A stretch of DNA of 63,989 nt, the filler included, from Octopus bimaculoides (taxonomy: Eukaryota), in the NCBI RefSeq assembly GCF_001194135.2. It is 6 parts of 6 records of this genome, joined end to end, with 100 filler letters (N's around TTAATTAATTAA, not from the genome) between each part and the next. Parts side by side here need not be neighbours in the genome. Positions count along the whole stretch, not along the records: positions 5,395 to 34,139 come from NC_069000.1; 5 more parts are not named here. One strand, 5' to 3'. Under the pieces are notes generated by a model. That model saw only the letters and a list, made by a program, of their open reading frames with translations. It was not told the origin of the DNA and did no database searches. Both the position numbers and the translations under genes were made by a program. This document shows, one piece after another, positions 15,800 to 34,139 of the stretch; position 1 is the stretch's first letter; every line of letters begins with the position of its first letter.

Positions 15800-16627
15800 T
15801 AATATAATAGTAAATAACGAGGGAAGAAAAAATACAGTGCATGTGTTTATTTGGCAAAAAATAATAATAATAATTAACACGATTTCACATNNNNNNNNNN
15901 NNNNNNNNNNNNNNNNNNNNNNNNNNTGTGTGTGTGTGTGTGTGTGTTTGTGTGTGTGTGTTTGTCCCCCTAGCATTGCTTGACAACCGATGCTGGTATA
16001 TTTCTGTCCCCGTCACTTAGCGGTTCGGCAAAAGAGACCGATAGCATAAGTACTAGGCTTACAAAGAATAAGTCCCGGGGTCGATTTGCTCGACTAAAGG
16101 CGGTGCTCCAGCATGGCCGCAGTCAAATGACTGAAACAAGTAAAAGAGTAAAAGAGATATATATAACTACGTCACAATATCTTTCCTCTCAAATGAAGGA
16201 TGTAACACTTTTATACGGATATCTGGTTTAAAAAAATTTGTAGTTCGTTTCTTGGTGAGTTTGGAGTTAATAAATGCATGTGTTGTTTGAGGCATTTGGT
16301 GTAGGTTGTTCAGGATGTGGAGAAGTGGATGGTTTACGATATGTCTATGTCATTCTCTGCTACTTGAACCCTGGCAGCTGTTAGCCAGTGATAGTGATAC
16401 GAATGCATTACACCCTTCATCTGCGAGGAAATGGATCGCGAAGAACTTAAATAAATATGCATGTTGAAAGATACGGAAATAATTTTTTTTTTAATTCTCG
16501 AACGCGTGATAATTCTAATAAATAGCGTGATCAGGATAAATTATCCATACATTGCAGAAAAATACGTTACCGGCCAGCCATGAGACTCGAGGAATGTGAG
16601 TTCGAATCTCATGGCTGGCCGGTAACG

Positions 16628-17769: not shown

Positions 17770-18344
17770 AGACATATAATGTAAATACACCGAAATCATC
17801 GAGAAGACACATAAATTCACACGCTGATACTTACCTTTGTGTTTTGAGAAAGATTCGTTGTGGCCAGAATGAGAGATAATCCAAAATTTATAAGAGGATA
17901 AATGGAACAGCGATGCAAATTATCTGAGGGCAATACGCCAAAATTTACTGTGGTAGTCGCTGTCGATGTTATGGTAGAGTTTGTAGAGGTTTAACGGTGG
18001 TCCTACAGTAGATTCATGCTGGAGGCTTATAACAAACTTTCTTAAGCCTTTATATATATTTAACGTACTAGTGATACATAATACGGGTGGGTGCTTATAA
18101 ATGCCTAGAATTCTCACTGCATATATATGGTTTGATATTTTCAACCAGTAAAACTACACGCAGACCCACGCAAAATATTACATCACTGACAGAAAATGTA
18201 AAACAAATATATGAAGAGACAGACAGAGAGAGGGGGGAGAGAGAGGGGGAAACAGAGACAGCAGCGGAGAAAGAGAGAGATGCTTATGGATGTATACGAC
18301 GGGATACCCAAATGAAACCGGAATTTTGCAATATTATTTTATTC

Positions 18345-19260: not shown

Positions 19261-20133
19261 TATATACCAACTTATAGGAGGTTTATGATGTTTTTATTCG
19301 CACAGTTACAGCAGGCTCTGCATCATCGTCAGACAGGGATGAAGAAGGAGAAAGAGAGAGAGAGAGAGAGCTGGCAGAAACGTTAACAGGCCAGACGAAA
19401 TGCTTAGCGGTATTTCGTTTGTCTTCATGTTCTGAGTTCAAATTCTGCCGAGGTCGACTTTCCCTTTCATCCTTTCGAGGTTGATAAATTAAGTACCAGT
19501 TGTGTACTGTGGTTGATCTAATTGACTGGGCCTCTTCCCAAAAACGTCGGGCCTTGTGCCTAGAGTAGAAAAGAGATGATGTAAACGGTAACAAAGCGAA
19601 ACGTCTGCCAGTTTATTGGAGGTTTTCCATGTTCTCATTTTCATTCTCTTTCGTTTTACTTGTTACTGAAGATAGTTTATAGTATCCGTTATACTATAGG
19701 CACAAAGCTTAGAATTTGTAGGGAGGGGTATAGCCGATTACATTAACCCCAGTATTTAACTGGTACTTAATTTATCGACTCCGAAAGGATGAAAGGCAAA
19801 GGCGACCTCGGCGGAATTTGAAGAGGGTCAACCATCGCTACTATATATTCGATCCCGAGACTCTGCTTCTTTACTCCACTTATATTTATATGATTTCAAA
19901 CACAGCAGTGAGAAATTACTTTCCAGCTTGTTTCTATCCGCTGCTTGCAATATTTTTCGCAAACAATCCCTCATTAAATAGAAACTGAAAATATAATACC
20001 GTGATGAAAATATTTCATGGAAAACTTCGTATCTTTCGATGAAATTATATTTCGAAATATCAATTTTTAAGTTGGAATGCATAATTTAAAAACTGAAATG
20101 TCAGTCAAAAGACAATATACCGTTAAATATGAT

Positions 20134-20139
20134 TTTATT
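20134..20139 (-). terminator. AATAAA in the conserved 3' block of exon C
   Basis: cctggAATAAAatc is conserved in all three copies. Confidence 0.5.
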
Positions 20140-20273
20140 CCAGGATATAACTATAACAATGGACGGAACCGTATGCAATATTCTGTAGAATTATGCACAC
20201 AAATTTTTCAAAATCTAAAATGCCCATTTGCAGATATTAGGAATAAAGTCTGACAAAAATATAACGCAAATTA

Positions 20274-20654
20274 CCCCTGTTTTGCAGAGAAAAGTGTAGG
20301 TGGCTAGCAGTGGACTCGAACCCACATCCCCGTGATTACGCATCACGATGCTTTGACCGATTAAGCTAAACTACCCACTACAAATTGCTCTGCAAATTTA
20401 AGATATATAAATCTCGCTTAATGAGACGCTCTCATATGTTAAATTCAAATTACGACAAACGTAAATAAACAAACGAAGTTTGCTTTTTTAGAAGCGTTGA
20501 GATGTGTTAGAAAGTTAAAGAAGTGATTTTAAATTCTCAATCGCAGAATAATGCTAATAATATAGCCTGAACTTTCTAAGACATCTCAACGCTTCTGAAA
20601 AAGCAAACTTCGTTTGATTATTTACGTTTATCGTAATTTGAATTTAATATAATA
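20274..20654 (-). mobile_element. 381-bp insertion (long hairpin + tRNA-like unit) with 7-bp TSD caaatta, in the 3' region of exon C
   Basis: Absent at the homologous site in copies A and B (ttgcaaattattttaatga). caaatta is repeated at 20267-20273 and 20655-20661. Confidence 0.75.
20301..20376 (-). ncRNA. tRNA-like sequence (Pol III A and B boxes; Thr-CGT-like loop), probably not a functional tRNA
   Basis: GGTAGTTTAGCTTAATCGGTCAAAGCATCGTGATGCGTAATCACGGGGATGTGGGTTCGAGTCCACTGCTAGCCA. A box TAGCTTAATCGG, B box GGTTCGAGTCC, D and anticodon stems present, acceptor and T stems imperfect, TTTT just downstream. Confidence 0.55.
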
Positions 20655-20775
20655 CAAATTATTTTAATGATAACGTTACCAAATATTATATATGTGATTT
20701 CTATAAATTCGTACACGGGTATTGTAATTCAACCGTAACAATGTTTTAATGTAAGGAAATTCAACTATATTCCGT

Positions 20776-21275
20776 TCAATATTTACTGCACACAACGCAG
20801 GTTAATTCTCGACCACTTTCATACATTTGATATGGCATTGTGTAATTAGTAGTCTGAACGAAATGCAGTGAACTTCCATTTTTGTTTACATAAATGTCAG
20901 GACAAGTTTCTGGCGCATAGTCTACGCACACATAATCATGTCTACCCTTGCCGTTGTCACACTCACTCATCAAATACCCATAATACTCAATTGTCCAACC
21001 AGAGCAACACTTTGTCCTGCCTGGTAACATCATAACAGCTGCAGGTTTTCGTGTCACACAGACAGCACAAGGAGCAACATGGTCATTAAGTTTTTCGGCG
21101 TTTTCAAAAGAAAATAAAGGATCAGTTGCGTAAGCCTCAAATTGATATCCACTCCCATATATAGTTGCAGTATCTTCAAATTTTTTAGTAGTATTGGCCC
21201 AAATCGGACCGTGAGGCAAACACAGGAGGTTACTTCCGCCACCACTAATGTCATGGTGTTGACCACCAACCAAGC
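20776..21275 (-). CDS. C4/spongin-related terminal exon C (intact, distal)
   Basis: Acceptor ttccatttttag|GC TTG GTT GGT GGT, phase 1, open to TGA at 20778-20776. Same motif set, but CGSLPC is replaced by TNYTMP. Confidence 0.85.
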
Positions 21276-21984
21276 CTAAAAATGGAAAAAAGAAAAGAAA
21301 TATACTAATTATATATTTTGTAAGATGAAATACCTGAAATATTATTTTAAAATAATCCTTAAACTATTATATTTTTTGACGACAATATATCATAACACAT
21401 AACTTAGAAGCAGAGCCACAGATGTACCAACACAACACACACGAGATTGAAACAGCCGACCTCATGCACTTTTCATGAGGAATTCCGGAAGGAGCTTCGT
21501 GAGACCACTCCTGAGACGCTTCCGAAAAAAGGAAAACCGTTGGAAAACAGTTTATAGCAGAGACTCCAGCAAAGAAGATCTGAAGAAGGAATTGTAATTC
21601 CGAAATATCATCGGACTATAGATAACCAAATTACAACAGGTATATAGTCCATTTTTTGTTCTATAGCGCATTGTTATACCATGATAAACTTTTTGTTCTT
21701 TACAAACAATACACAATGCTTCAAGCGAACTACAATACTCTCCCATAATCTATTGGTATTACACGCAACATGAGAAGATCAAGTAATTATAATCACCGTA
21801 CTATTGTAATATGATCAACAGGATGGCCACATGTGGCTCACTCATTATCTAAGTGCGGCAGAATGCAGTTGACAGGTTCTGCATGAGGTCACAGCCGTCT
21901 GTCATTGTTTTAAATATGAATATGCATTATCATATAATTTGTTATCGTCTCTGACCTTTCTCATTTTTGTACAGAATGTTTAGG

Positions 21985-22190
21985 TAAGAGAGGGGTTGAG
22001 CTATGATCTGATCACCATCTTGTTGTCTGCAACCTCAAACATTCTACAGCAGGAAGAAATCACTAAGTTACTAGGTCTAGTGAGACTTACAGAATGAAGT
22101 GGAAAGCCTTACCGGTTGATGGTATCAGAAACAAATATGTGGACACAGTTATATCTAAAATGCCTGTAAGAACTGAGTATGCTTAGTGAT
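21985..22190 (+). mobile_element. RTE LINE fragment paralogous to 26925-27130 (co-duplicated with the cassette)
   Basis: gagctatgatctgatcaccatctt...gagacttacagaatgaagtggaaagcc...agaactgagtatg matches the fragment upstream of exon B. Confidence 0.6.
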
Positions 22191-22283
22191 AAATTATTAT
22201 ATATGGTTATTGACGATTTAAAGTCTATTTCTCGGCATATTTGACATAAGAATTTTTTTCTTTTGCCCTATTTGTAAGTTGTT

Positions 22284-22328
<45 letters not shown>

Positions 22329-24066
22329 ACATTCATACAGACACACACACACACACACACATACACACACACACACGCATATGTTGCTAGCGAACAATTT
22401 GAAGAAGCGGAAACTGGAGTATTGACCAACAACACCGTATGAGATGATTACCTGATGATTCATGCGCACGGACGAATTACCATCTTGAGCTCGCTGCACA
22501 TGTGGACTGTGCATTATAGAGGATGGTTGAATACGTGTGGTGTCCGAAAGTATGTGCAATGCGCGTATTTCGGTTTGCATATTTCGGCAGTGCGTATTTT
22601 GGAAGTGTGGAAATTTGTTTTGATCTGTCTAAGTCTTCGAACGCAATGAAAGTACATTTTTTCCAATTTAGTGGTAGAGGATTAAATACTGGCGTATCCT
22701 TATGATCAGGAAACAAAAGCTCAGTCCTTCGAATGTTGTTACCCCTGTTCTTCAAATCCTAACATGTTCAAGACATAGCAACTGATACCCAAAGTCTTTT
22801 CATTAAAAAAATCTTTTTTTTTATCCTTCTCCATGATTTCCCGGAACGTAGCTGCGCAATGTACAAGTAATTCATTGAAACATTCAAAAATCTTGAACAA
22901 GCAATAAGAAAGAGGCCGAACAAAAATCTGAAAATGATTCACATTACTATGTGTAGCCATACGCACATCTTTGGTAACACATCAGGCAATCGGCACGCTT
23001 GGATGCTCATTAGAATCCACTGCCGCGATTGATTGTACAAATTTGACTTCTACTTATTTAGTCCAACGAAGGACATTGTTTGGGGAATAATGATATGATT
23101 ACAGGGACGAAGTGAAAGTGATTGGGAATAAGACGATACGACGGTACATACCTGAATCTTTTCAAAGAGCATTGGAGAAAAAGGTTCAACGAGGGCTCAA
23201 ATGCATTGCTTTTAATGGAGATTTTGTTGAGTTGTATCTCTATATAGAGTTAGAGTTAGTCTATCAACATTTTGAACGCCCATCTAATTAATAGCCAAGC
23301 TATGCGATTGCTTACATTCGTCTCTGAAAACCTCTCGTATATACAGAATGCTTTGGTATTTCGTGCATCTTTCTATTAGTATATGACACTTTATCAAACA
23401 CTTTTGTAATTATTTCAAGGACAATGAAGATTCTTTTATGATAAACATTAACATGAGTCTATATTAAAGAGTTCAATTTAATAGAATGCAGATTATAATA
23501 CCATGTTAAATTTAACGAATTCTAATTAATTTTATGTTATAAAGGTTAAGTAGTCTAAAGATTTTTTTATCATTATTTTCATTCATTTTTTTATTATTAT
23601 TTTCATTCATATATAGTTGAGAAAAGAGTAGAGACCATCGAAACAAATCAATGTTTTATATATAAAAGATGGGGGTGGATATAGTACAGACGTAAGTCCA
23701 AGACATTTCAATTTAAGAGGGACTTGAATGAAAAATTATATAAAGAAAATATTATTGGTTTCCATGTACCTCATCTTATCAAATATCAGTAAAAGTTTAT
23801 AAAAATTTGTAGCTGAAGTATTTTATCTTCTGTCTAGCAGTCAAGAACATGTGGTGGAGATTTTTCGTTGAAGTCTTCTTTAAATATGGTTTCGTATGGA
23901 GTTCAAAGTGTTAGAGAGTGAGAGAAGGGATGTCTATTGTCTGAAAGAAATCTTTGTGTGTCCCTGCTATAAAATCCATTCAATAAATGCTTTTTAGCGA
24001 CTCCCTTGGCAGGAACACACAAAGATTTCTTTTAATTCTGTGCTATTTCCACCTCCATCTTATATA

Positions 24067-24127
<61 letters not shown>

Positions 24128-25401
24128 GTATAGCATTTTTGTTTGTCTTAATAACTGACGAAATGCCGGAACAGATTTCCGCCCCGACATCCGGAATTTG
24201 GCGTTTTGTTATGGCAACCGAATAATTGTCACATATTATATTTATTGATAAATTCCTCTCTATTTACATAATATCGAGGTCTCATTTATTCTTTTGTTGT
24301 CATACTATTACTATTAACATATATATATATATCTATCATCATCATCGTTTAACGTCCGCTTTCCATGCTAGCATGGGTTGGACGACTCGACTGAGGACTG
24401 GTGAACCAGATGGCTACACCAGGCTCCAATCTGATCTGGCAGAGTTTCTACTGTTGGATGCCCTTCCTAACGCCAACCACTCAGAGAGTGTAGTGGGTGA
24501 TTTTACGTGCCACCCGCACGAAGGCCAGTCAGGCGGTACTGGCAACGGCCACGGTCGAAATGGTGTCTTTTATGTGCCACCCGCACAAGAGCCAGTCCAG
24601 GGGCACTGGCAACGATCTNNNNNNNNNNNNNNNNNNNNNNNNNNNNNNNNNNNNNNNNNNNNNNNNNNNNNNNNNNNNNNNNNNNNNNNNNNNNNNNNNN
24701 NNNNNNNNNNNNNNNNNNNNNNNNNNNNNNNNNNNNNNNNNNNNNNNNNNNNNNNNNNNNNNNNNNNNNNNNNNNNNNNNNNNNNNNNNNNNNNNNNNNN
24801 NNNNNNNNNNNNNNNNNNNNNNNNNNNNNNNNNNNNNNNNNNNNNNNNNNNNNNNNNNNNNNNNNNNNNNNNNNNNNNNNNNNNNNNNNNNNNNNNNNNN
24901 NNNNNNNNNNNNNNNNNNNNNNNNNNNNNNNNNNNNNNNNNNNNNNNNNNNNNNNNNNNNNNNNNNNNNNNNNNNNNNNNNNNNNNNNNNNNNNNNNNNN
25001 NNNNNNNNNNNNNNNNNNNNNNNNNNNNNNNNNNNNNNNNNNNNNNNNNNNNNNNNNNNNNNNNNNNNNNNNNNNNNNNNNNNNNNNNNNNNNNNNNNNN
25101 NNNNNNNNNNNNNNNNNNNNNNNNNNNNNNNNNNNNNNNNNNNNNNNNNNNNNNNNNNNNNNNNNNNNNNNNNNNNNNNNNNNNNNNNNNNNNNNNNNNN
25201 NNNNNNNNNNNNNNNNNNNNNNNNNNNNNNNNNNNNNNNNNNNNNNNNNNNNNNNNNNNNNNNNNNNNNNNNNNNNNNNNNNNNNNNNNNNNNNNNNNNN
25301 NNNNNGTTGTGAGTGTTTATTGAGCGAAAACGCCTAAAGCTGGAATACATGAATTAAAAACTGAAATGTCAGTCAAAAGACAATATACCGTTAAATATGA
25401 T

Positions 25402-25407
25402 TTTATT
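25402..25407 (-). terminator. AATAAA in the conserved 3' block of exon B
   Basis: cctggAATAAAatc is conserved in all three copies. Confidence 0.5.
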
Positions 25408-25711
25408 CCAGGATATAACTATAACAATGGACGGAACCGTATGCAATATTCTATAGAATTATGCACACAAACTTTTCAAAATCTAAAATGCCCATTTGCG
25501 GAAATTAGGAATAAATTCTGACAAAAATATATTGTAAATTATTTTAATGATTTCCATCATTTGAATACAGGACAACGTTACCAAATATTATACATGTGAT
25601 TTCTATTTATTCTTCTCGGTGAATTAATGCTTTATAAATTCACTCATAAATTTAATCTTGTAAATCAACCGTAAACATATCCAGATGAAATCGAATTCCA
25701 CTATACTGTAT

Positions 25712-26208
25712 TCAATATTTTGTGCACACAACGCAGGTTAATTCTAGACCATTGATATACGACCATGGCAATGAACCACAAACAGTCTGAACGAAATAAA
25801 GTAAAGCTGCGTCTTCACTTGCGTTACTTGCTGCAATTGTTTCTGGTGCATAGTCCACGCACACGTATTCATTTCTGCCGTTGTGCTTGTTAGCCTCAGC
25901 CATTAAATATCCTGAATACTCAGTCTTCCAATCAGAGTAACACACTGTTCTGGCTGGTAACATCATAACTATTGCAGGTTCTCGTGTCAAACAGACAGCA
26001 CAGGGAACATTGTGATCATGAAGTTCTTTAGCGTTTTCAAAAGAAAACAAAGAATCAGATGTATAGGCCTCGAGTTGATATTCAGCGCCATATATACTAG
26101 CAGCAGCTTCGACTTTTGAAGTAAATTCGGCAGGAATCGGGTCTTTAGGTAGACATAAGAGATTACTTCCACCACCAATAACCTTATAACTTTGACCACC
26201 AACCACAC
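25712..26208 (-). CDS. C4/spongin-related terminal exon B (intact)
   Basis: Acceptor aaattctag|GT GTG GTT GGT GGT, phase 1, open to TGA at 25714-25712. Same motif set as exon A (GGGSNLLCLP, HDHNVPCAVC, EYSGYLM, YVCVD, CGSLP, ELTCVVC). Confidence 0.85.
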
Positions 26209-26341
26209 CTAGAATTTGAGTAAAAAAAGATATACAATAATTACATATTTTGATAGACCACATACCTAAAATATTATATTTTCCGATGACAATATATCAC
26301 AATATACCAATATTCCACATAACATGAGAAAATCAAGAAAA

Positions 26342-26735
26342 TATAAGGAGTGGCTGTGTGGTAAGTAACTTGCTTACCAACCACATGGTTCCAAGTTCAG
26401 TCCCACTGCGTGGCACCTTGGGCAAGTGTCTTCTACTATAGACTCGGGCCGACCAAAGCCATGTGTGTGGATTTGGTAGACGGAAACTGAAAGAAGCCCG
26501 TCGTATATATGTTTGTGTGTCTGTGTTTGTCCCCCCACCATCGCTTGATAACCGATGCAGGTGTGTTTACGTCCCCGTAACGTAGCGGTTCGGCAAAAAG
26601 AGACCGATAGAATAAGCACTAGGCTTACAAAGAATAAGTCCAGGGGTCGATTTGATTCGACTAAAGGCGGTGCTCCAGCATGGCCGCAGCCAAATGACTG
26701 AAACAATTAAAAGAGTAAAGAGAGAGTAAAGAGTC
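26342..26735 (+). mobile_element. SINE family A, full length (tRNA-like head ggagtggctgtgtggtaag...; tail agtaaaag repeats)
   Basis: Matches many other copies in the window; B-box-like gttcagtcc. Confidence 0.85.
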
Positions 26736-26924
26736 TACAGCCGTACTGTTGTTTTATAACCAACAAGGTGGTCACATGTGACTCACTCATGATCTCAGTG
26801 TGTCAGTTGGCAGGTTCCTGGTTCAGTATGAGGTCACAAATGTCTGTCATTGTTTGAAATATAAATTTGTATATAACATAATTTATTATCTTCTCTGACT
26901 TTTCTCATTTTTGTACTGGATGAA

Positions 26925-28530
26925 TGTCTAAAAGAGAGGGGTAGAGCTATGATTTGATCACCATCTTGTCTGCAACATCAAAACGATCTACAACAGGAAG
27001 AAATGATAAAGTTATAAAGTCCATTGAGACTTACAGAATGAAGTGGAAAGCCCTGTCGGATGATGGTATCAGAAGCAAATATGTAGACACAATTATATCC
27101 AAAATACCTGAAAGAACTGAGTATGTGAAACAGAATGGAGACTAGAAAATTACTATTTTTAAATCTCACAACGAGAAATATTCAGCAACGGTACTTTGTA
27201 GTAAAGATTGTTTGCCAACATAACATGGCAGTCCTGGTTTAGGACGAACGTTGCTGTAATTTAACCCCAGGAGATATCGTCTCCATCTGGCTATACGACA
27301 CGATCTGTGTCCTTGTATTTTCGAACAAGGGAATCTAGGATGAAAGGAAATAACCCAGAAATCGCGACATACAGATATTGTTTTGAGCTGAGTGGGGGTG
27401 CTACATTCCCTTGTTCGAAAATATAAGGACACAGATCGTGTCGTATAGCCAGCTGGAGATGATGTCTCCTGGGGCTAAATTACAGCAACATTCGTCCTAA
27501 ACCAGAACTGCCATGTTATGTTGGCAAACAATCTTTGCTCCAGAGTGGAGACTGTTTACGTAAGTCTCTTCTTTGGCTGTAAAGTTCCGTAGGAAATGGG
27601 GCTCGGTGTGATGCCAAATGGCATGAGAACCCCTTGCTTTAATCAGAAAGTTGAAAGTATCATCGGGGCAAAGAAGAGGGCATACAAAGCTTGACTTGGA
27701 AAATGTCTCCTTTTTGAGTAGAAGCTACACTGAGGTGCGAAGCAGTAAAAACGTTCAATGTAAAAGGATGGAAGGACTTTGAGGTGAAGCTGAACAAGAC
27801 TTTAGATTGGGCAATGGATTATTCTAGCAGACAATTCGCCGCCTTCCTACAAACAACTCGGTTGAAGTTCTTCTATTTGTAGAGGAATGTAAACTTGGCA
27901 AGTGTAGAGAATATTTTGCTGATCTAAATTCGTTCACGATAAAATCTTATGATGAGCACGTGGTGCATTTAGGGTCAAAGTTCCAAAGTGTCTGATGACA
28001 TAGAGGCGATTAAAGCCCTTATATTTGCCAAAGCTGTTTTCAATAGAGTAAGTATTCCCTAGCTGACCCGTTTGTGCCGGCTGACTTGGACATCTGGGAA
28101 GACACTAAATCAATGGTAATCCGAGATGGTAATACCAATTTTAAAAAAAAAGGACAGAAGAGAGGATGCTGTAATTATAAAGTGATCTCTTTCTTGTGTT
28201 CCCCACCCCCGCTCTCCAAAGATTTCGGGCCTCGTGCCTAGAATAGAAAAGGAGATATTGTGATATATGTCTGGAAAAGATCAGTATGGAAATTGTTGAG
28301 TCCAAACTTACTGAAGAGCAGTGTAGCTTCCGTCCTGAGTGCAGCATAACTCAGATATTTATTCTACTGCAGGTAGAGCGAATTGACATGCGCAGTCATT
28401 ATGGAAGTGGCAGCAATCGTTTGGTAGAGGATTTGTTTACTGATATTTGAAGACAGCTCGGTGCTACAAGGCTCATTGGAAGATCATCTCCAGCTATTGT
28501 AATCGAACCAATGTCATTTCGCATCAGAAG
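26925..28530 (+). mobile_element. Decayed RTE-clade LINE (endonuclease end to RT), interrupted by a fold-back element
   Basis: Fragments DHHLV, EWRLFT, KKRAYKA and LTEEQCSFRP across frameshifts. Confidence 0.6.
27200..27539. mobile_element. Fold-back / MITE-like element: 135-bp inverted arms (27200-27334, 27405-27539) with a 70-bp spacer
   Basis: The arms are reverse complements with about 8 mismatches by manual count, mostly transitions. Confidence 0.8.
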
Positions 28531-28836
28531 GACACACATCAAACTTCGCTTTCAGGTATAGAGAAAAAGTCCCCAGTCACCAGAAGAATCGAAAGAAAAG
28601 AAGCTCCATATCATTTCAGTACACAAAATCAATCTTTTAACTGAAATGTGTCTGTTGCTGTAAAGCGATATTGTAATATATGGATGTAATAAGCTTTTGT
28701 GAGCAACTCACGAGGCGAGCAACTCTTTGGAAAGGTCTAAATCCCGAACCAAGTTATTTACTCAATTTTGTGAAAATTGCTCTGGTAATTCGTCTTCGGA
28801 CTCCTGTATACTTTCGTTTTTCTAAGTCACTACTCC

Positions 28837-28907
<71 letters not shown>

Positions 28908-28926
28908 NNNNNNNNNNCTCTCTCTT

Positions 28927-28970
<44 letters not shown>

Positions 28971-29402
28971 AGCCATCTTTTATAGCATCATATTCTCGCT
29001 GCGTTTGTTGAGCATGAAATTTAGCGTTCACATGACCATCTGAGGCAACCTACATACACACACACACACACACACACACATACACACGAGTTCAGTGAGA
29101 ATGAGGTTGACATCAGCGTTCATTCTGGGACTCGGTATGTTCACTTGTTTATATGAATCTTTACGTGTTTATATTAATTCAAATCTACCAGCGAGAAATC
29201 ACTTTCCAGTTCATTTCCCTTTGTTGACTGCAATATTTTTCAGATATAACTGAAACCTCTTAAAACAATGAAACTAAAAATATAACACTCCATTGAAAAT
29301 ACTTTACAGAAAACCTTACATCTTTCGGTGAAATTATATTTCGAAATACACATTTTCAAGCTGATAAATTAAAAAGTGGTATGTCTTGTTGTTAAATATA
29401 AC

Positions 29403-29408
29403 TTTATT
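29403..29408 (-). terminator. AATAAA in the conserved 3' block of exon A
   Basis: cctggAATAAA is conserved at the homologous position in all three copies. Confidence 0.5.
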
Positions 29409-29708
29409 CCAGGATATAACTATAACAACAGGCGGAACCGTATGATTCATTCTATAGAATTATGCAAAAAAATCTTTTCGAAATTCAAAATGCCATTAAG
29501 AATAAATTTTGACAAATATATATTGCAAATTATTTTAATGATTTTCATTAGTTGAATATAGGACAACGTTACCAAATATTATGCAGGAGATTTCTATTTA
29601 TTCTTCTCAATGAGTTCATCTTTTATAATTCACCTATAAATCTGTACGCGGATCTTGTAATTCAACCGTAAAATTTTTATAATGAATTTGAATTCGGCCA
29701 TATTCTAT

Positions 29709-30208
29709 TCAATATTTACTGCAAACAACACAGCTTAATTCTTGGCCATTTTCATACGGTGGACATGGTAATGAACCACACATAGCCTGAACTATATACA
29801 TTGAAGCTCCGTTTAAGTTTTTGTAACTTTTTGGATTTATTTCTGGTGCATGGTCTACGCACACGTATTCATGTCTACTATGGCTGTAGTCGTATTCACT
29901 CATCAAATACCCATAGTACTCAATTGTCCAACCAGGGTAACACTTTGTCCTGGCTGGTAACATCATAACAGCTGCAGGTTTTTGTGTCAAACAGACAGCA
30001 CAAACAACATCATAGTTTTAAAATCTTCTTGCGTTTTCATTAGAAAAACCTCCACTATTTACATTATTCTCAAGTTGATATTCACTCCCATATATAGTTG
30101 CGGCTTGTTCAAGCTCCGTAGAAAATTTGAGCCACATCATATTGTTAGGTAAACACAGGAGATTACTTCCACCACCAGTAAAGTTATAACGTGCACCACC
30201 AACCATTC
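29709..30208 (-). pseudogene. C4/spongin-related terminal exon A (proximal), carrying one in-frame TAA at 30020-30018
   Basis: Acceptor aattctag|GA ATG GTT GGT GGT. Motifs GGGSNLLCLP, CAVC, MMLPART, GWTIEYYGYLM, YVCVD, CGSLPCPPY, ELSCVVC. The two ORF-track pieces are in frame, separated only by TTT TAA AAC. Confidence 0.8.
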
Positions 30209-30997
30209 CTAGAATTGTGGGGGAAAAGAAATATATAAATTATATATTTTATAAGACAAAATACCTGAAATATTATTTAAAAGTATTTCTTGAGCAATTA
30301 TATTTTCCGTTGACACGATATCACTATATTTCACTATTCCACCCAGGAATTATCTTTTTCAAATGTTTCTTTTTATTCGTCTGATGGCTTATTTGTACTG
30401 GCGAAAAAGACATTCACATTTTTATAGAAAACATTTCTGGAGAGGTTCCATCATTTAAATAATTCCATTCAATTCCATTTGTTCCGAATAAACTCGTATT
30501 ATTCAACACAAAAACTTTGGCTTGTAAGGTTTTTCCACAAAATATAATGTCACTTATCAATTCGCCTTTAAAATGTGATTCTTTTCCTNNNNNNNNNNNN
30601 NNNNNNNNNNNNNNNNNNNNNNNNNNNNNNNNNNNNNNNNNNNNNNNNNNNNNNNNNNNNNNNNNNNNNNNNNNNNNNNNNNNNNNNNNNNNNNNNNNNN
30701 NNNNNNNNNNNNNNNNNNNNNNNNNNNNNNNNNNNNNNNNNNNNNNNNNNNNNNNNNNNNNNNNNNNNNNNNNNNNNNNNNNNNNNNNNNNNNNNNNNNN
30801 NNNNNNNNNNNNNNNNNNNNNNNNNNNNNNNNNNNNNNNNNNNNNNNNNNNNNNNNNNNNNNNNNNNNNNNNNNNNNNNNNNNNNNNNNNNNNNNNNNNN
30901 NNNNNNNNNNNNNNNNNNNNNNNNNNNNNNNNNNNNNNNNNNNNNNNNNNNNNNNNNNNNNNNNNNNNNNNNNNNNNNNNNNNNNNNNNNNNNNNNA

Positions 30998-31790
30998 ACT
31001 GGTTTAAATGAATGTCCTAAAGTGTTCCAGTATCCGCTACCTACTCCGGAGGACATATTTACGAAATTAAACGATGGTAAGATGTTTTCTAAATTGGGAG
31101 AATGTACGAAAAAAAAACAACAACAGACGAGGACAGGTGGTGTAAACAACAAAAGGATGTATTAGTTTGACGCTCGGGAATACAGAAAGTCTTTAACGTT
31201 TCGAGCTACGCTCTTCAACAGAAAGAATACAGAGAAAACAAGGAGAAAAACACGGAGAAAAAAAATTGAATGGTCTTTGGTCAACGATCTATCATGGCTT
31301 CTGCGGACAGGAAGTTTAGAAAGTTCACGCAGGAGAGCAATGAAAAAGGGGAGATAACAAAAGGGAGATCCTTCAGACACGTACCTACAAATTAGAGTAG
31401 ACGATGAATGCTCTAAATACCTAACAATTAACACACATGAAGGACTGTATAAATACAACAGGTTACCGTTTGGCTTAAAAGTCGCACAGGCGATTTTTCA
31501 ACAGATTATGGATGTAATGTTAGCGGGTTGCGAATTCGCAATTCCATATCTGGATGCTATATTCATAAAAAGCGAATTTCGGAACCAACACGTAGAGCGC
31601 GACAATTATGTGTTCGAAAAAGTAAGAATTACGGATTTACTTTGAGTGAAGGAAAGTGTGAATTATTTAGAACAAATCATTGACAGAAATGAATGTCGAC
31701 CAGATTCATTGAAGCCAGACGCAATTAGAAATATTCCCCCTCCGACAAATATAGCGACCTTACAAGCTTTGTAGTGACAGGCAAAATTAC
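30998..31790 (+). mobile_element. Gypsy/Ty3-like RT remnant split by an insertion at about 31100-31355
   Basis: YPLPTPEDIFTKLNDGKMFSKL / SDTYLQIRVDDECSKYLTINTHEGLYKYNRLPFGLKVAQAIFQQIMD...YLD. Confidence 0.85.
31100..31355. mobile_element. Insertion with Penelope-like terminal motif (acgtttcgagc-tacg-ctcttcaacaga); related motifs at about 31790 and 41920-42000
   Basis: Motif resemblance to Penelope pLTR ends only; no ORF support. Confidence 0.35.
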
Positions 31791-31880
31791 ACGTTTCGAG
31801 TGGAGCTCTTCATCAGAAATATAGGAAAAGTCCAAAGAAGGGGAGACGGAGAAAGAAAATCGCGAACAATACACACGCAG

Positions 31881-31934
<54 letters not shown>

Positions 31935-31947
31935 NNNNNNNNNNNNN

Positions 31948-32013
<66 letters not shown>

Positions 32014-32709
32014 AGGATTTACTTTTCGTAATGAGATAAAAAAAAACCAAGGCTGTGTATAATATAGAACATTTATAAATAGAATGTCTTACAGCTGTTT
32101 CCGGGATATTTATTATATCCCTTCATCGGAGACGGTGTGAGAGGATGTTTAAGCAATAGATAGTTTACATAAGATAAGAAATAGAGAGTGAATGCAGGGA
32201 TATTGTATTTGTAAATCCATTATTTAGACAGAATGGTATACATATAAGATTCCAATACTTTGTGAGTAAAAAATCCAGTCGACTTTAAGATTGGTCAATG
32301 CCTTTGTAAATCCATTATTAAGATTCCAGTACCCTATGAGTAAAATCCAACAGTCTTTGAAATTGGTCATTCCAAATACACAGTGTTATTGAATCAAGGT
32401 TTGTTTTTCTTTTTACATATTTTAACGCTTTCGAGAGAAGGCTTTAAGAAAATAATGGTTAGAATTGTACAATAGCCAAATGGTAAATCTGCTAATCATT
32501 TGATTATGGTGTGGCTATTAAATATTTGTTTTGTTTTGATTTTGTACTTCTATGAAGCTATAATGTATTTAATAGCCAACCTTAGTTCGCGTTTTATCAG
32601 AATAAGTAGTCGGCAATATATTTTATGCGAGAAAGAGAGAGAAAGAGAGAGAAAGAGAGAGAGGGGGAGAGGGAGAGGAGGGAGGGAGAGAGCAAGAGAC
32701 AAGGAGAGA

Positions 32710-32747
<38 letters not shown>

Positions 32748-32811
32748 AGTGAGGGACTGGAGGGAGAGAAAACAGATAATAGTTATAAAGGGATTGAATT
32801 GGTAAAGATGT

Positions 32812-32864
<53 letters not shown>

Positions 32865-33610
32865 NNNNNNNNNNNNNNNNNNNNNNNNNNNNNNNNNNNN
32901 NNNNNNNNNNNNNNNNNNNNNNNNNNNNNNNNNNNNNNNNNNNNNNNNNNNNNNNNNNNNNNNNNNNNNNNNNNNNNNNNNNNNNNNNNNNNNNNNNNNN
33001 NNNNNNNNNNNNNNNNNNNNNNNNNNNNNNNNNNNNNNNNNNNNNNNNNNNNNNNNNNNNNNNNNNNNNNNNNNNNNNNNNNNNNNNNNNNNNNNNNNNN
33101 NNNNNNNNNNNNNNNNNNNNNNNNNNNNNNNNNNNNNNNNNNNNNNNNNNNNNNNNNNNNNNNNNNNNNNNNNNNNNNNNNNNNNNNNNNNNNNNNNNNN
33201 NNNNNNNNNNNNNNNNNNNNNNNNNNNNNNNNNNNNNNNNNNNNNNNNNNNNNNNNNNNNNNNNNNNNNNNNNNNNNNNNNNNNNNNNNNNNNNNNNNNN
33301 NNNNNNNNNNNNNNNNNNNNNNNNNNNNNNNNNNNNNNNNNNNNNNNNNNNNNNNNNNNNNNNNNNNNNNNNNNNNNNNNNNNNNNNNNNNNNNNNNNNN
33401 NNNNNNNNNNNNNNNNNNNNNNNNNNNNNNNNNNNNNNNNNNNNNNNNNNNNNNNNNNNNNNNNNNNNNNNNNNNNNNNNNNNNNNNNNNNNNNNNNNNN
33501 NNNNNNNNNNNNNNNNNNNNNNNNNNNNNNNNNNNNNNNNNNATATATATATATATATATATACACATATATTATTTATATTATAGAGACGAACAGTTTG
33601 GTATACTAAC

Positions 33611-33685
33611 CTTCATACACAAGTTCAGCAGTATCAGGACAGGTTTTTCTACCCCACCGGGTATACAGTGATCCGTGACCGGCTT
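33611..33685 (-). CDS. Spongin/short-chain collagen C4-related gene, shared upstream exon (AGHGSLYTRWGRKTCPDTAELVYEG)
   Basis: Acceptor tttttaatttcacag|AA, donor GAAG|gttagt, 75 nt, phase 1-1. Y-x-R-W-G-R-x-x-C-P...LVYEG is the N-terminal motif of this NC1-like domain. Confidence 0.9.
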
Positions 33686-34107
33686 CTGTGAAATTAAAAA
33701 GGAAACAATGCATTTAAACAAAACTTAAGGGTGTATTATCTGCAATTAAAGCTGGTTACCCTAAGATTTTACTGGTATTTAGCTAAATGGGGACAAAGAT
33801 GTATTGAGCACTTTTTAGATACAGGATTACTTATGAAAATTAATTTGCAATTTGGTGACATAAGCCAACTAGATGTAAGGAGACAATAATAAATTACTCT
33901 TTTACTCTTTTACTTGTTTCAGTCATTTGACTGCGGCCATGCTGGAGCACCGCCTTTACTCGAGCAAATCGACCCCAGGACTTATTCTTTGTAAGCCTAA
34001 TATTTATTCTATCGGTCTCTTTTTTGCCGAACCGCTAAGTGACGGGGACGTAAACACACCAGCATCGGTCGTCAAGCGATGTTGGGGGGACAAATACGGA
34101 CACACAA

Positions 34108-34139
<32 letters not shown>

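What the first reader, a model, noticed from the sequence alone, without database searches (positions are those of the whole stretch)
20776..33685. Candidate constant-exon / variable-last-exon system: one WGR exon serving three diverged C4/spongin-NC1 terminal exons
SEEN: only one exon encoding the domain's N-terminal motif (YTRWGRKTCPDTAELVYEG, phase-1 donor) occurs, at 33685-33611. Downstream on the same strand are three ~500-nt exons, each starting with a phase-1 acceptor that restores G-[MVL]-VGG, and each with its own stop and AATAAA. I found no WG-x-x-x-CP exon between A and B (fully sequenced apart from 12 N in a microsatellite) or in the sequenced part between B and C. B and C are about 58% identical by my manual count, with many synonymous changes, yet both keep 165-codon open frames and the core Cys. 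KNOWLEDGE: these motifs are typical of spongin short-chain-collagen-related proteins ('short-chain collagen C4-like'), whose domain is homologous to collagen IV NC1. INFERENCE: B and C stay under selection, which requires the shared 5' exon to splice over A (and over B). One locus would then make secreted isoforms with swappable recognition domains, a reverse of the variable-first-exon logic of clustered protocadherins. I do not know of this being described for this family.
Basis: partly seen in the sequence, partly recalled or inferred. Interest (0 to 1): 0.85.

Follow-up and report, generated by a model that had tools for sequence, protein, structure and literature searches.

The report
Octopus gene with three spare last exons
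In an Octopus bimaculoides gene for a collagen-IV-NC1-like protein, the exon encoding most of the domain has been copied three times behind a single shared upstream exon; two copies are still open and were once annotated as isoforms, but all three evolve under relaxed constraint and one is already broken, so this looks more like exon birth-and-death than a tuned diversity system.

Summary
On the minus strand there is one 'WGR' exon (33685-33611, phase 1/1). Downstream lie three roughly 500-nt terminal-exon copies, each with a good acceptor, a stop and a positionally conserved AATAAA. No second WGR exon, exon 1 or linker exon lies between them in the sequenced DNA. The correction: the nearest copy, A, carries an in-frame TAA (30020-30018).

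The window is Octopus bimaculoides. RefSeq's earlier protein versions already gave W+C as 'short-chain collagen C4-like isoform X1' and W+B as 'isoform X2'. The current versions keep W+B and make C a separate gene.

In canonical paralogue arrays every last exon has its own upstream exons, so this layout is atypical: only the last exon was duplicated locally.

The selection evidence is mixed:
- ORF-breaking lesions and indels are far rarer than neutral drift predicts.
- dN/dS on these branches is 0.68 (0.48-0.99), against 0.35 for canonical paralogues and 0.17 for a canonical orthologue pair.
- B lost one conserved Cys and C lost two.
- C's orthologue in another octopod is frameshifted and diverges about as fast as its flanks.

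Verdict: a real terminal-exon triplication. Alternative last-exon use is plausible but unproven, and the copies are decaying. Interest is modest.

The parts
33611..33685 (-). Shared 'WGR' exon (AGHGSLYTRWGRKTCPDTAELVYEG). It is an internal exon, phase 1 to phase 1, and is the only copy in the piece.
   Evidence: nhmmer E 4e-36. It encodes strands 16-20 and the first half of strand 30-39 of the AF2 model.
29709..30208 (-). Terminal-exon copy A, the nearest to W. The reading frame is broken by TAA at 30020-30018. All conserved Cys are kept.
25712..26208 (-). Terminal-exon copy B, open for 165 codons. It is the last exon of the current RefSeq protein XP_014783819.2. It lost near-invariant Cys183 (to Trp) and one residue.
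20776..21275 (-). Terminal-exon copy C, open for 165 codons. It was RefSeq isoform X1 and is now LOC128247004. It lost both Cys of the CxxxxC pair, which its orthologue still has.
29403..29408 (-). AATAAA 301 nt after A's stop, at a position conserved among the copies.
25402..25407 (-). AATAAA 305 nt after B's stop, at a position conserved among the copies.
   Evidence: The 3' flank here is 94-96% identical to C's.
20134..20139 (-). AATAAA after C's stop. It lies 637 nt away because of an insertion of about 440 nt. The same hexamer is present in the orthologous contig L004.
22479..22514 (-). 12-codon private first exon (MHSPHVQRAQDG, donor G|GTAAT) that current RefSeq joins to C. The product would lack the anchor and the W exon.
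26741..27125 (-). Non-coding block upstream of B that is homologous to 21796-22181 upstream of C (82%). It marks the extent of the duplicated unit, which contains no W exon.
21796..22181 (-). Counterpart of that block, upstream of C.
17829..17951 (-). Exon-1-like pseudo-exon downstream of C (VNFGVLPSDNLHRCSIYPLINFGL...). The start codon is lost (GTA AAT TTT in place of ATG GAT TTT). No W or last exon follows it in the piece.

Best explanation
A segment of about 2-5 kb was duplicated locally at least twice in one member of the octopus 'short-chain collagen C4-like' family. These are membrane-anchored, collagen-less proteins with a domain resembling collagen IV NC1. The duplicated segment carried only the last exon with its acceptor, 3' UTR and poly(A) signal.

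The result is exon 1 - (linker) - W - A - B - C. Because the W exon supplies two core strands and the first Cys of the domain, each copy can make a complete domain only by splicing to the shared W exon. The copies therefore behave as alternative last exons.

They were translated for much of their history (inferred from the lack of lesions). Selection on them is much weaker than on canonical paralogues, and the array is now decaying:
- A is dead through a nonsense codon.
- C has lost a disulfide and evolves close to the neutral rate.
- B is probably the exon mainly used.

Shown here: the anatomy, the extent of the duplication, the relaxed constraint and the lesions.
Inferred: that W-to-B and W-to-C splicing really occurs.
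For: - Anatomy: one W exon and three last exons with intact splice and poly(A) signals.
- Extent of the duplication: A, B and C share non-coding flanks with each other. Paralogues 2 Mb away share only the exon.
- Canonical genes have four coding exons, and each last exon has its own upstream exons.
- Other decayed extra last-exon copies lie in the cluster: L003 22469-22660, L001 7563-7944, and L002 34566-35063 with one stop.
- RefSeq models W+C and W+B exist.
- The W exon is part of the fold.
- Indels: the exons show 0-1 in-frame indels per 124-144 substitutions. The flanks show about 0.04-0.11 indel events per substitution.
- Neutral simulation gives P(ORF intact) of about 0.007-0.02 at K = 0.1.
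- 39-41 of 43 near-invariant family positions are kept.
- Relaxation: branch dN/dS is A 0.76, B 0.69 and C 0.83. Pooled it is 0.68 (0.48-0.99), against 0.35 for canonical paralogues.
- C versus its orthologue differs at 21% of columns that are at least 90% conserved, against 3% for canonical pairs.
- Lesions: nonsense codon in A, Cys losses in B and C, and a frameshift in C's orthologue found in three Logan contigs.
Against: - There is no transcript evidence. Gnomon isoforms may rest on protein alignments alone.
- Gnomon demonstrably builds chimeric isoforms across tandem paralogues in this family: O. sinensis LOC115221348 spans 61 kb over several complete genes.
- Current RefSeq separates C from the gene.
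- The gaps, especially 24619-25305, could hide private exons. The W exon's placement rests on scaffolding of a 597-nt contig.
- The lesion deficit partly reflects picking intact copies out of a cluster that also holds broken ones.
- A, the first terminal exon met by the polymerase, has a good acceptor and poly(A) signal and would have to be skipped.
Confidence: 0.5

Rival explanations
1. The copies are pure relics. They are orphan pseudo-exons that were never, or are no longer, spliced to W. At most one is part of a working gene, and possibly the whole locus is a dying family member. The open frames of B and C are survivors by chance in a cluster full of fragments.
For: - A has a stop codon.
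- C versus its orthologue: exon identity is about the same as flank identity, and dN/dS is 0.62 with an interval that includes 1.
- A versus C gives dN/dS 0.97.
- The orthologue is frameshifted.
- Conserved Cys residues are lost.
- Neither B nor C has an orthologue above 68% identity among O. sinensis or O. vulgaris proteins, whereas canonical orthologues share a 90%-identity cluster.
- The canonical linker exon is missing, and the RefSeq model uses a non-homologous exon 2.
- Dead exon-1 and last-exon fragments lie nearby.
Against: - About 12-23 disabling lesions are expected on the three terminal branches under full or half-time neutrality. One is seen.
- There are no frameshifts among A, B and C despite 124-144 substitutions per pair.
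- Substitutions still avoid conserved columns (Mann-Whitney p from 2.5e-5 to 4e-10 for the A/B/C pairs).
- Pooled dN/dS reached 1 in only 2.7% of bootstraps.
Confidence: 0.33
2. A maintained diversity system. B and C (and A until recently) are functional, swappable recognition domains kept by selection. Their high dN/dS reflects diversifying selection on surface loops.
For: - ORF integrity and indel avoidance.
- Bursts of amino-acid change on the internal branches after duplication: least-squares dN/dS of about 2 on anc(C,Corth).
- The most variable parts are the segments that also vary across the family.
- C lost both Cys of one presumed local disulfide rather than one.
- Acceptors and the poly(A) signal are conserved in all copies and in the orthologue.
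Against: - Changes also hit 14-21% of near-invariant core columns, against 3% in canonical pairs.
- A is truncated, B keeps an unpaired Cys, and C's orthologue is frameshifted.
- The internal-branch estimates rest on very short branches and a crude least-squares method.
- Only three copies exist, one of them dead, and none is known to be conserved across species.
Confidence: 0.12
3. An assembly artefact or hidden exons. B and C belong to separate complete genes whose W, linker and exon-1 copies are lost in gaps or collapsed into the single 597-nt W contig, or the contigs are scaffolded in the wrong order.
For: - This is a gap-rich Illumina assembly.
- The W contig is tiny and flanked by gaps.
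- The v2 assembly did not close any gap.
- Gap lengths are only estimates.
Against: - The A-B interval is sequenced except for 10 N in a microsatellite, and it has no family exon even with DNA profiles.
- The homologous upstream blocks of B and C are followed by 1.8 and 2.4 kb of sequenced DNA without a W exon.
- A canonical gene needs at least 8 kb and three upstream exons, which does not fit into 3.5-4.4 kb spacings.
- The contig ends are microsatellites, the usual cause of assembly breaks.
Confidence: 0.05

Closest known systems
Spongin short-chain collagens / 'short-chain collagen C4' family (Exposito 1991; Aouacheria 2006; reviewed in PMC5395295)
   Same: - There is significant sequence similarity to many proteins so named in molluscs, annelids, cnidarians and amphioxus.
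- The Cys-rich C-terminal domain's predicted fold matches collagen IV NC1 first.
- The best, though weak, PDB sequence hit is also collagen IV NC1.
   Different: - The octopus paralogues have no Gly-X-Y collagenous part. They have an N-terminal hydrophobic anchor and a short linker instead.
- Pfam C4 does not score them.
- A, B and C form a divergent sub-branch marked by 'FSFENA'. The searches run here returned no annotated O. sinensis or O. vulgaris member of it.
Genes with constant 5' exons and arrays of alternative 3' terminal exons, e.g. Drosophila lola and mod(mdg4) (my own knowledge, not tested here)
   Same: Shared upstream exons are followed by tandemly duplicated terminal exons, each with its own stop and poly(A) site. 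Each terminal exon encodes a variant of the same domain.
   Different: - Here there are only three copies, one of them dead, and all are weakly constrained.
- Usage is unproven.
- The split falls inside one domain rather than between domains.
- There is no evidence of trans-splicing.
Clustered protocadherins / UGT1A (variable first exons with constant 3' exons; my own knowledge)
   Same: One locus and a tandem array of exon paralogues joined to shared exons.
   Different: - The polarity is mirrored.
- Those systems use one promoter per variable exon and have dozens of conserved, expressed variants.
- Nothing comparable is shown here.
Birth-and-death evolution of tandem gene families, with orphan exon fragments
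   Same: The cluster holds complete genes, copies with a single stop and heavily decayed last-exon copies. A, B and C fit as early to middle stages of that process.
   Different: B and C have stayed open longer than neutral decay predicts.

Membership tests
Spongin / short-chain collagen C4 (collagen IV NC1-like) family | Significant sequence similarity to named family members across the domain | tested here: met
   W+B hits 268 proteins at E <= 1e-5. Many are named short-chain collagen C4-like, at 40-68% identity over 97-99% of the query.
Spongin / short-chain collagen C4 (collagen IV NC1-like) family | Conserved cysteine framework of the domain | tested here: inconclusive
   W+A keeps every Cys among the 43 checked family positions. 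B lacks Cys183. C lacks Cys178 and Cys183, and C's orthologue keeps both.
Spongin / short-chain collagen C4 (collagen IV NC1-like) family | NC1-type fold | tested here: inconclusive
   The AF2 model has pLDDT 89.8. The top 22 Foldseek PDB hits are all collagen IV NC1 (probability up to 1.0, E 4e-5), but TM-scores are only 0.21-0.27. The Pfam C4 model gives no hit at E <= 1.
Spongin / short-chain collagen C4 (collagen IV NC1-like) family | Short collagenous (Gly-X-Y) region N-terminal to the domain | tested here: not met
   The octopus paralogues show a hydrophobic anchor plus a linker and no Gly-X-Y. None has a precomputed PF01391 hit, unlike the amphioxus members. For this gene the upstream part lies outside the window and is partly in gaps.
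Alternative-last-exon (constant 5' / variable 3' exon) locus | Two or more terminal exons, each with an acceptor, stop and poly(A) signal, downstream of shared exons on one strand | tested here: met
Alternative-last-exon (constant 5' / variable 3' exon) locus | No private upstream exons or promoters for the distal terminal exons | tested here: inconclusive
   None is found in the sequenced DNA by tblastn or nhmmer. The gaps remain, and RefSeq now predicts a private 12-codon first exon for C.
Alternative-last-exon (constant 5' / variable 3' exon) locus | Transcripts joining the shared exon to each terminal exon | not testable with these tools
   Only predicted RefSeq models are available: X1 = W+C and X2 = W+B. 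No Logan-derived ORF containing B or C was found.
Alternative-last-exon (constant 5' / variable 3' exon) locus | Purifying selection on each variable exon | tested here: inconclusive
   There is a deficit of lesions and indels. However, dN/dS is 0.65-0.83 per branch, pooled 0.68 (0.48-0.99). A is broken and C is close to neutral against its orthologue.

The most novel reading that the evidence does not exclude
An octopus-specific, rapidly evolving branch of membrane-anchored NC1-like proteins uses one constant exon set and tandemly duplicated terminal exons to make isoforms with different recognition surfaces. The high dN/dS, the preserved reading frames and the coordinated loss of a disulfide would then reflect diversifying selection rather than decay.
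Probability: 0.15. Interest if true: 0.55.

Novelty: new member of a known kind. Interest (0 to 1): 0.3.

Why it matters
If W-to-B and W-to-C splicing is real, this would be a small, young example of how duplicating a terminal exon creates alternative protein C-termini. It would be caught while selection decides which copy to keep. It would also sit in a large, unstudied octopus expansion of collagen-less NC1-like proteins.

In practice it shows that RefSeq isoform calls in this tandem family change between annotation versions and should not be taken as evidence of isoform diversity. It does not open a long-standing question.

Tried and rejected
- A third protein search with exon 1 + W, meant to find the O. 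sinensis orthologue and hence a gap-free orthologous locus, returned nothing.
- The species behind SRR11869390/91, which holds C's orthologue, could not be identified from the paper library.
- Pfam gave no domain hit. The PDB profile search gave only a weak hit to collagen IV NC1 (E 0.26).
- I first read 'exons more diverged than flanks' for B against C as a sign of accelerated exon evolution. I rejected that. B and C's 3' flank is 94-96% identical while C's true orthologue is only 80% identical there. The flank was therefore recently homogenised by gene conversion and is not a neutral clock.
- The v2 chromosome-scale assembly was expected to close the gaps, but it has the same N runs.
- The idea that B and C are last exons of complete genes was rejected on spacing and on the profile searches.
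- The branch dN/dS values come from a least-squares fit of Nei-Gojobori distances, not from codon-model likelihood. Treat them as rough.
Full report
**What the window is.** The piece is 100% identical to Octopus bimaculoides chromosome CM046620.1, positions 43.44-43.47 Mb, of GCA_001194135.2 (locus L001). That newer assembly is a re-scaffolding of the same contigs. Every N run in the window recurs there with the same length, so it neither closes the gaps nor tests the contig order independently.

**Checking the observation.** All features are on the minus strand.
- The W exon at 33685-33611 reads AGHGSLYTRWGRKTCPDTAELVYEG. It follows ...tttcacag| and ends G|gttagt. It is 75 nt, phase 1 to phase 1.
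- The three terminal-exon copies lie at 30208-29709 (A), 26208-25712 (B) and 21275-20776 (C). Each follows a pyrimidine-rich ...tag| acceptor, and its first two bases complete the split Gly codon. Each ends in CVVC(S/T)KY-stop.
- An AATAAA sits 301 nt after A's stop and 305 nt after B's stop. In C it is 637 nt away because of an insertion of about 440 nt. The same hexamer is present in C's orthologue.
- B and C are 57.6% identical in protein.
- tblastn at E <= 100 and nhmmer with DNA profiles built from six W exons, five exon 1 copies and four linker exons find one W exon (E 4e-36; next best E 1.2). They also find one exon-1-like sequence, downstream of C. No linker exon appears anywhere in 5395-34139.
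- The correction: A is not open. It has TAA at 30020-30018 where B and C's orthologue have CAT and C has AAT.
- No exon touches a gap. The W exon, however, lies on a 597-nt contig bounded by microsatellites and gaps.

**Already in the databases.** W+B is 100% identical over its whole length to XP_014783819.1, 'short-chain collagen C4-like isoform X2'. An exact look-up shows that MHCFLFNFTE+W+C is XP_014783818.1, 'isoform X1'. Both start at an ATG inside the intron upstream of W, so they are truncated models.

In the current versions, XP_014783819.2 (289 aa) joins four exons:
- exon 1 (MDFGALSK..., a hydrophobic anchor, 144 nt, with a donor at the canonical place);
- a 154-nt exon with no similarity to the family's linker exon;
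- W;
- B.

C has become LOC128247004 (XP_052830939.1), with a private 12-codon first exon at 22514-22479. I could not see what evidence either model rests on.

Gnomon isoforms in this family are not reliable guides. O. sinensis LOC115221348 spans 61 kb across several complete tandem genes, and its isoforms swap linker and W exons between them.

**How the family is normally built.** Canonical paralogues are about 255 aa and have four coding exons:

| Exon | Content | Length and phase |
|---|---|---|
| 1 | anchor | 144 nt, ends in phase 0 |
| 2 | linker | 52 nt, phase 0 to 1 |
| 3 | W | 75 nt, phase 1 to 1 |
| 4 | last exon | about 498 nt |

They span 8 kb or more. In the gap-free O. sinensis array every last exon is preceded by its own exon 1, linker and W. 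The layout W-A-B-C, with 3.5 and 4.4 kb between copies, is therefore atypical.

A, B and C share non-coding sequence with each other:
- about 90 nt of intron next to the acceptor (79-83%);
- several hundred nt of 3' flank;
- for B and C, a block 530-915 nt upstream (82%).

Paralogues 2 Mb away share only the exon. A segment carrying only the last exon was therefore duplicated locally.

Extra last-exon copies in various states of decay occur elsewhere in the cluster:
- L003 22469-22660, behind a canonical gene;
- L001 7563-7944, upstream of this gene's exon 1;
- L002 34566-35063, with one stop.

**What the domain is.**
- Pfam gives nothing.
- A family profile hits collagen IV NC1 only weakly in PDB sequences (E 0.26).
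- The AF2 model of W+B is confident (pLDDT 89.8).
- Its 22 best PDB fold matches are all collagen IV NC1 (probability up to 1.0), though with low TM-scores of 0.21-0.27.
- The W exon forms strand 16-20 and the first half of strand 30-39, which runs across the exon junction. It also carries the first Cys. A last exon without a W exon, as in LOC128247004, cannot encode the whole domain.

The octopus proteins have no Gly-X-Y region. They resemble spongin short-chain collagens (PMC5395295) only in this domain.

**Selection: evidence for constraint.**
- Among A, B and C there are 124-144 substitutions per pair but only 0-1 indel, and that one is in frame. The aligned flanks show 0.04-0.11 indel events per substitution.
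- A neutral simulation gives about a 10% chance of staying stop-free at K = 0.1. With indels included the chance is about 1-2%.
- The terminal branches have dS of 0.10-0.19. Even if only half of each branch were neutral, a dozen lesions would be expected. One is seen.
- B, C and A keep 41, 39 and 40 of 43 positions that are at least 90% conserved in 99 relatives.
- Their differences avoid conserved columns.

**Selection: evidence for relaxation.**
- Pairwise dN/dS is 0.63 (A-B), 0.97 (A-C) and 0.58 (B-C).
- Least-squares branch values are A 0.76, B 0.69 and C 0.83. Pooled with C's orthologue they give 0.68 (0.48-0.99), against 0.35 (0.22-0.51) for canonical terminal branches. None of 150 bootstraps reversed that order.
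- A Logan genomic contig from an unidentified octopod (SRR11869390, with the same sequence state in SRR11869391 and a third contig) is the orthologue of C. It is 81.5% identical across intron, exon and 3' flank, against 70-72% to A and B.
- It carries a 2-nt deletion that replaces the last 25 residues.
- C against this orthologue: exon 82.3% identical, flanks 79-80%, dN 0.18, dS 0.29, dN/dS 0.62 (0.36-1.05).
- Control, canonical P0015 against its O. sinensis orthologue at similar flank divergence: exon 93.8%, flanks 76-77%, dN 0.032, dN/dS 0.17 (0.07-0.32).
- C and its orthologue differ at 21% of near-invariant columns, against 3% for canonical pairs.
- B lost Cys183. C lost Cys178 and Cys183, both of which the orthologue still has (CYTMPC).
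- Neither B nor C has a relative above 68% identity among O. sinensis or O. vulgaris proteins. Canonical orthologues fall into the same 90%-identity clusters.

**History.** The exon tree is (((C, C-orthologue), A), B). The triplication therefore predates that species split. The B-C 3' flank is 94-96% identical, more than C is to its own orthologue there (80%). This points to recent gene conversion of the flank, so flanks cannot serve as a neutral clock for B against C.

**Conclusion.** The sequence pattern is real and unusual for the family, and sharing of the W exon is the only way B or C could encode a full domain. The scarcity of lesions indicates that they were translated for much of their history. 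Constraint is much weaker than on canonical genes, one copy is already dead, and another is close to neutral with a broken orthologue.

I read this as a local terminal-exon duplication that created alternative last exons now going through birth-and-death, rather than a maintained variable-domain system. Transcript data would settle it.

Noticed in passing
window 17829-17951 (-): Exon-1-like pseudo-exon (VNFGVLPSDNLHRCSIYPLINFGL...) with a GTAAGT donor. ATG GAT TTT has been replaced by GTA AAT TTT. No W or last exon follows in the remaining 12 kb of the piece, which has several gaps.
   Followed up: partly
L001 7563-7944 (outside the window, upstream of this gene's exon 1): A fourth, heavily decayed copy of the last exon, with several stops and frame breaks.
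   Followed up: partly
window 20273-20700, incl. 20299-20376 (-) and inverted repeat 20435-20651: An insertion of about 440 nt in C's 3' flank, absent from the orthologous contig L004. It contains a tRNA-Thr(CGT)-like sequence (ARAGORN) and a 217-nt hairpin. It is probably a tRNA-derived SINE or another mobile element.
   Followed up: partly
window 15931-16164, 26510-26729, 33889-34124: Three copies, 90-91% identical, of a repeat of about 220 nt. It also occurs in L001 and L002 and is presumably an interspersed element. One copy lies on the small W-exon contig.
   Followed up: no
window 25337-25541 vs 20069-20273: B's and C's 3' flanks are 94-96% identical here, although the exons are 73% identical and C's true orthologue is only 80% identical in the same stretch. 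This indicates recent gene conversion between the two flanks.
   Followed up: partly
L001 12571-12727 (outside the window): The second coding exon of the current RefSeq model XP_014783819.2 has no similarity to the family's linker exon. The canonical 52-nt linker exon was not found anywhere in L001 and may lie in a gap or be lost.
   Followed up: partly
L007 10001-71342 (O. sinensis) and L002 10001-52594 (O. bimaculoides): RefSeq gene models in the canonical arrays span several complete or partial tandem paralogues. Their isoforms swap linker or W exons between them (e.g. LOC115221348 X1/X6, LOC106877462 X1/X2). They may be real read-through splicing or annotation artefacts.
   Followed up: partly
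octopus paralogues in general (P0004, P0011, P0015, P0022 etc.): The octopus 'short-chain collagen C4' proteins have no collagen repeats. They are proteins of about 255 aa with an N-terminal hydrophobic anchor, a short linker and the NC1-like domain, present in dozens of tandem copies. The paper library holds almost nothing on them: one ink-proteome peptide (PMC10142993).
   Followed up: partly
window 27193-27546 and 19437-19822: Long inverted repeats (81% and 68% arm identity) in the spacers between the exon copies. They are probably mobile-element remnants.
   Followed up: no
L004 vs L006 (SRR11869390 vs SRR11869391): The two orthologous contigs differ at 6 of 1334 bases. Three lie in the exon, making two amino-acid changes and no silent codon change, and three lie in the flanks. 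The numbers are tiny, but the exon is not depleted in variation.
   Followed up: partly
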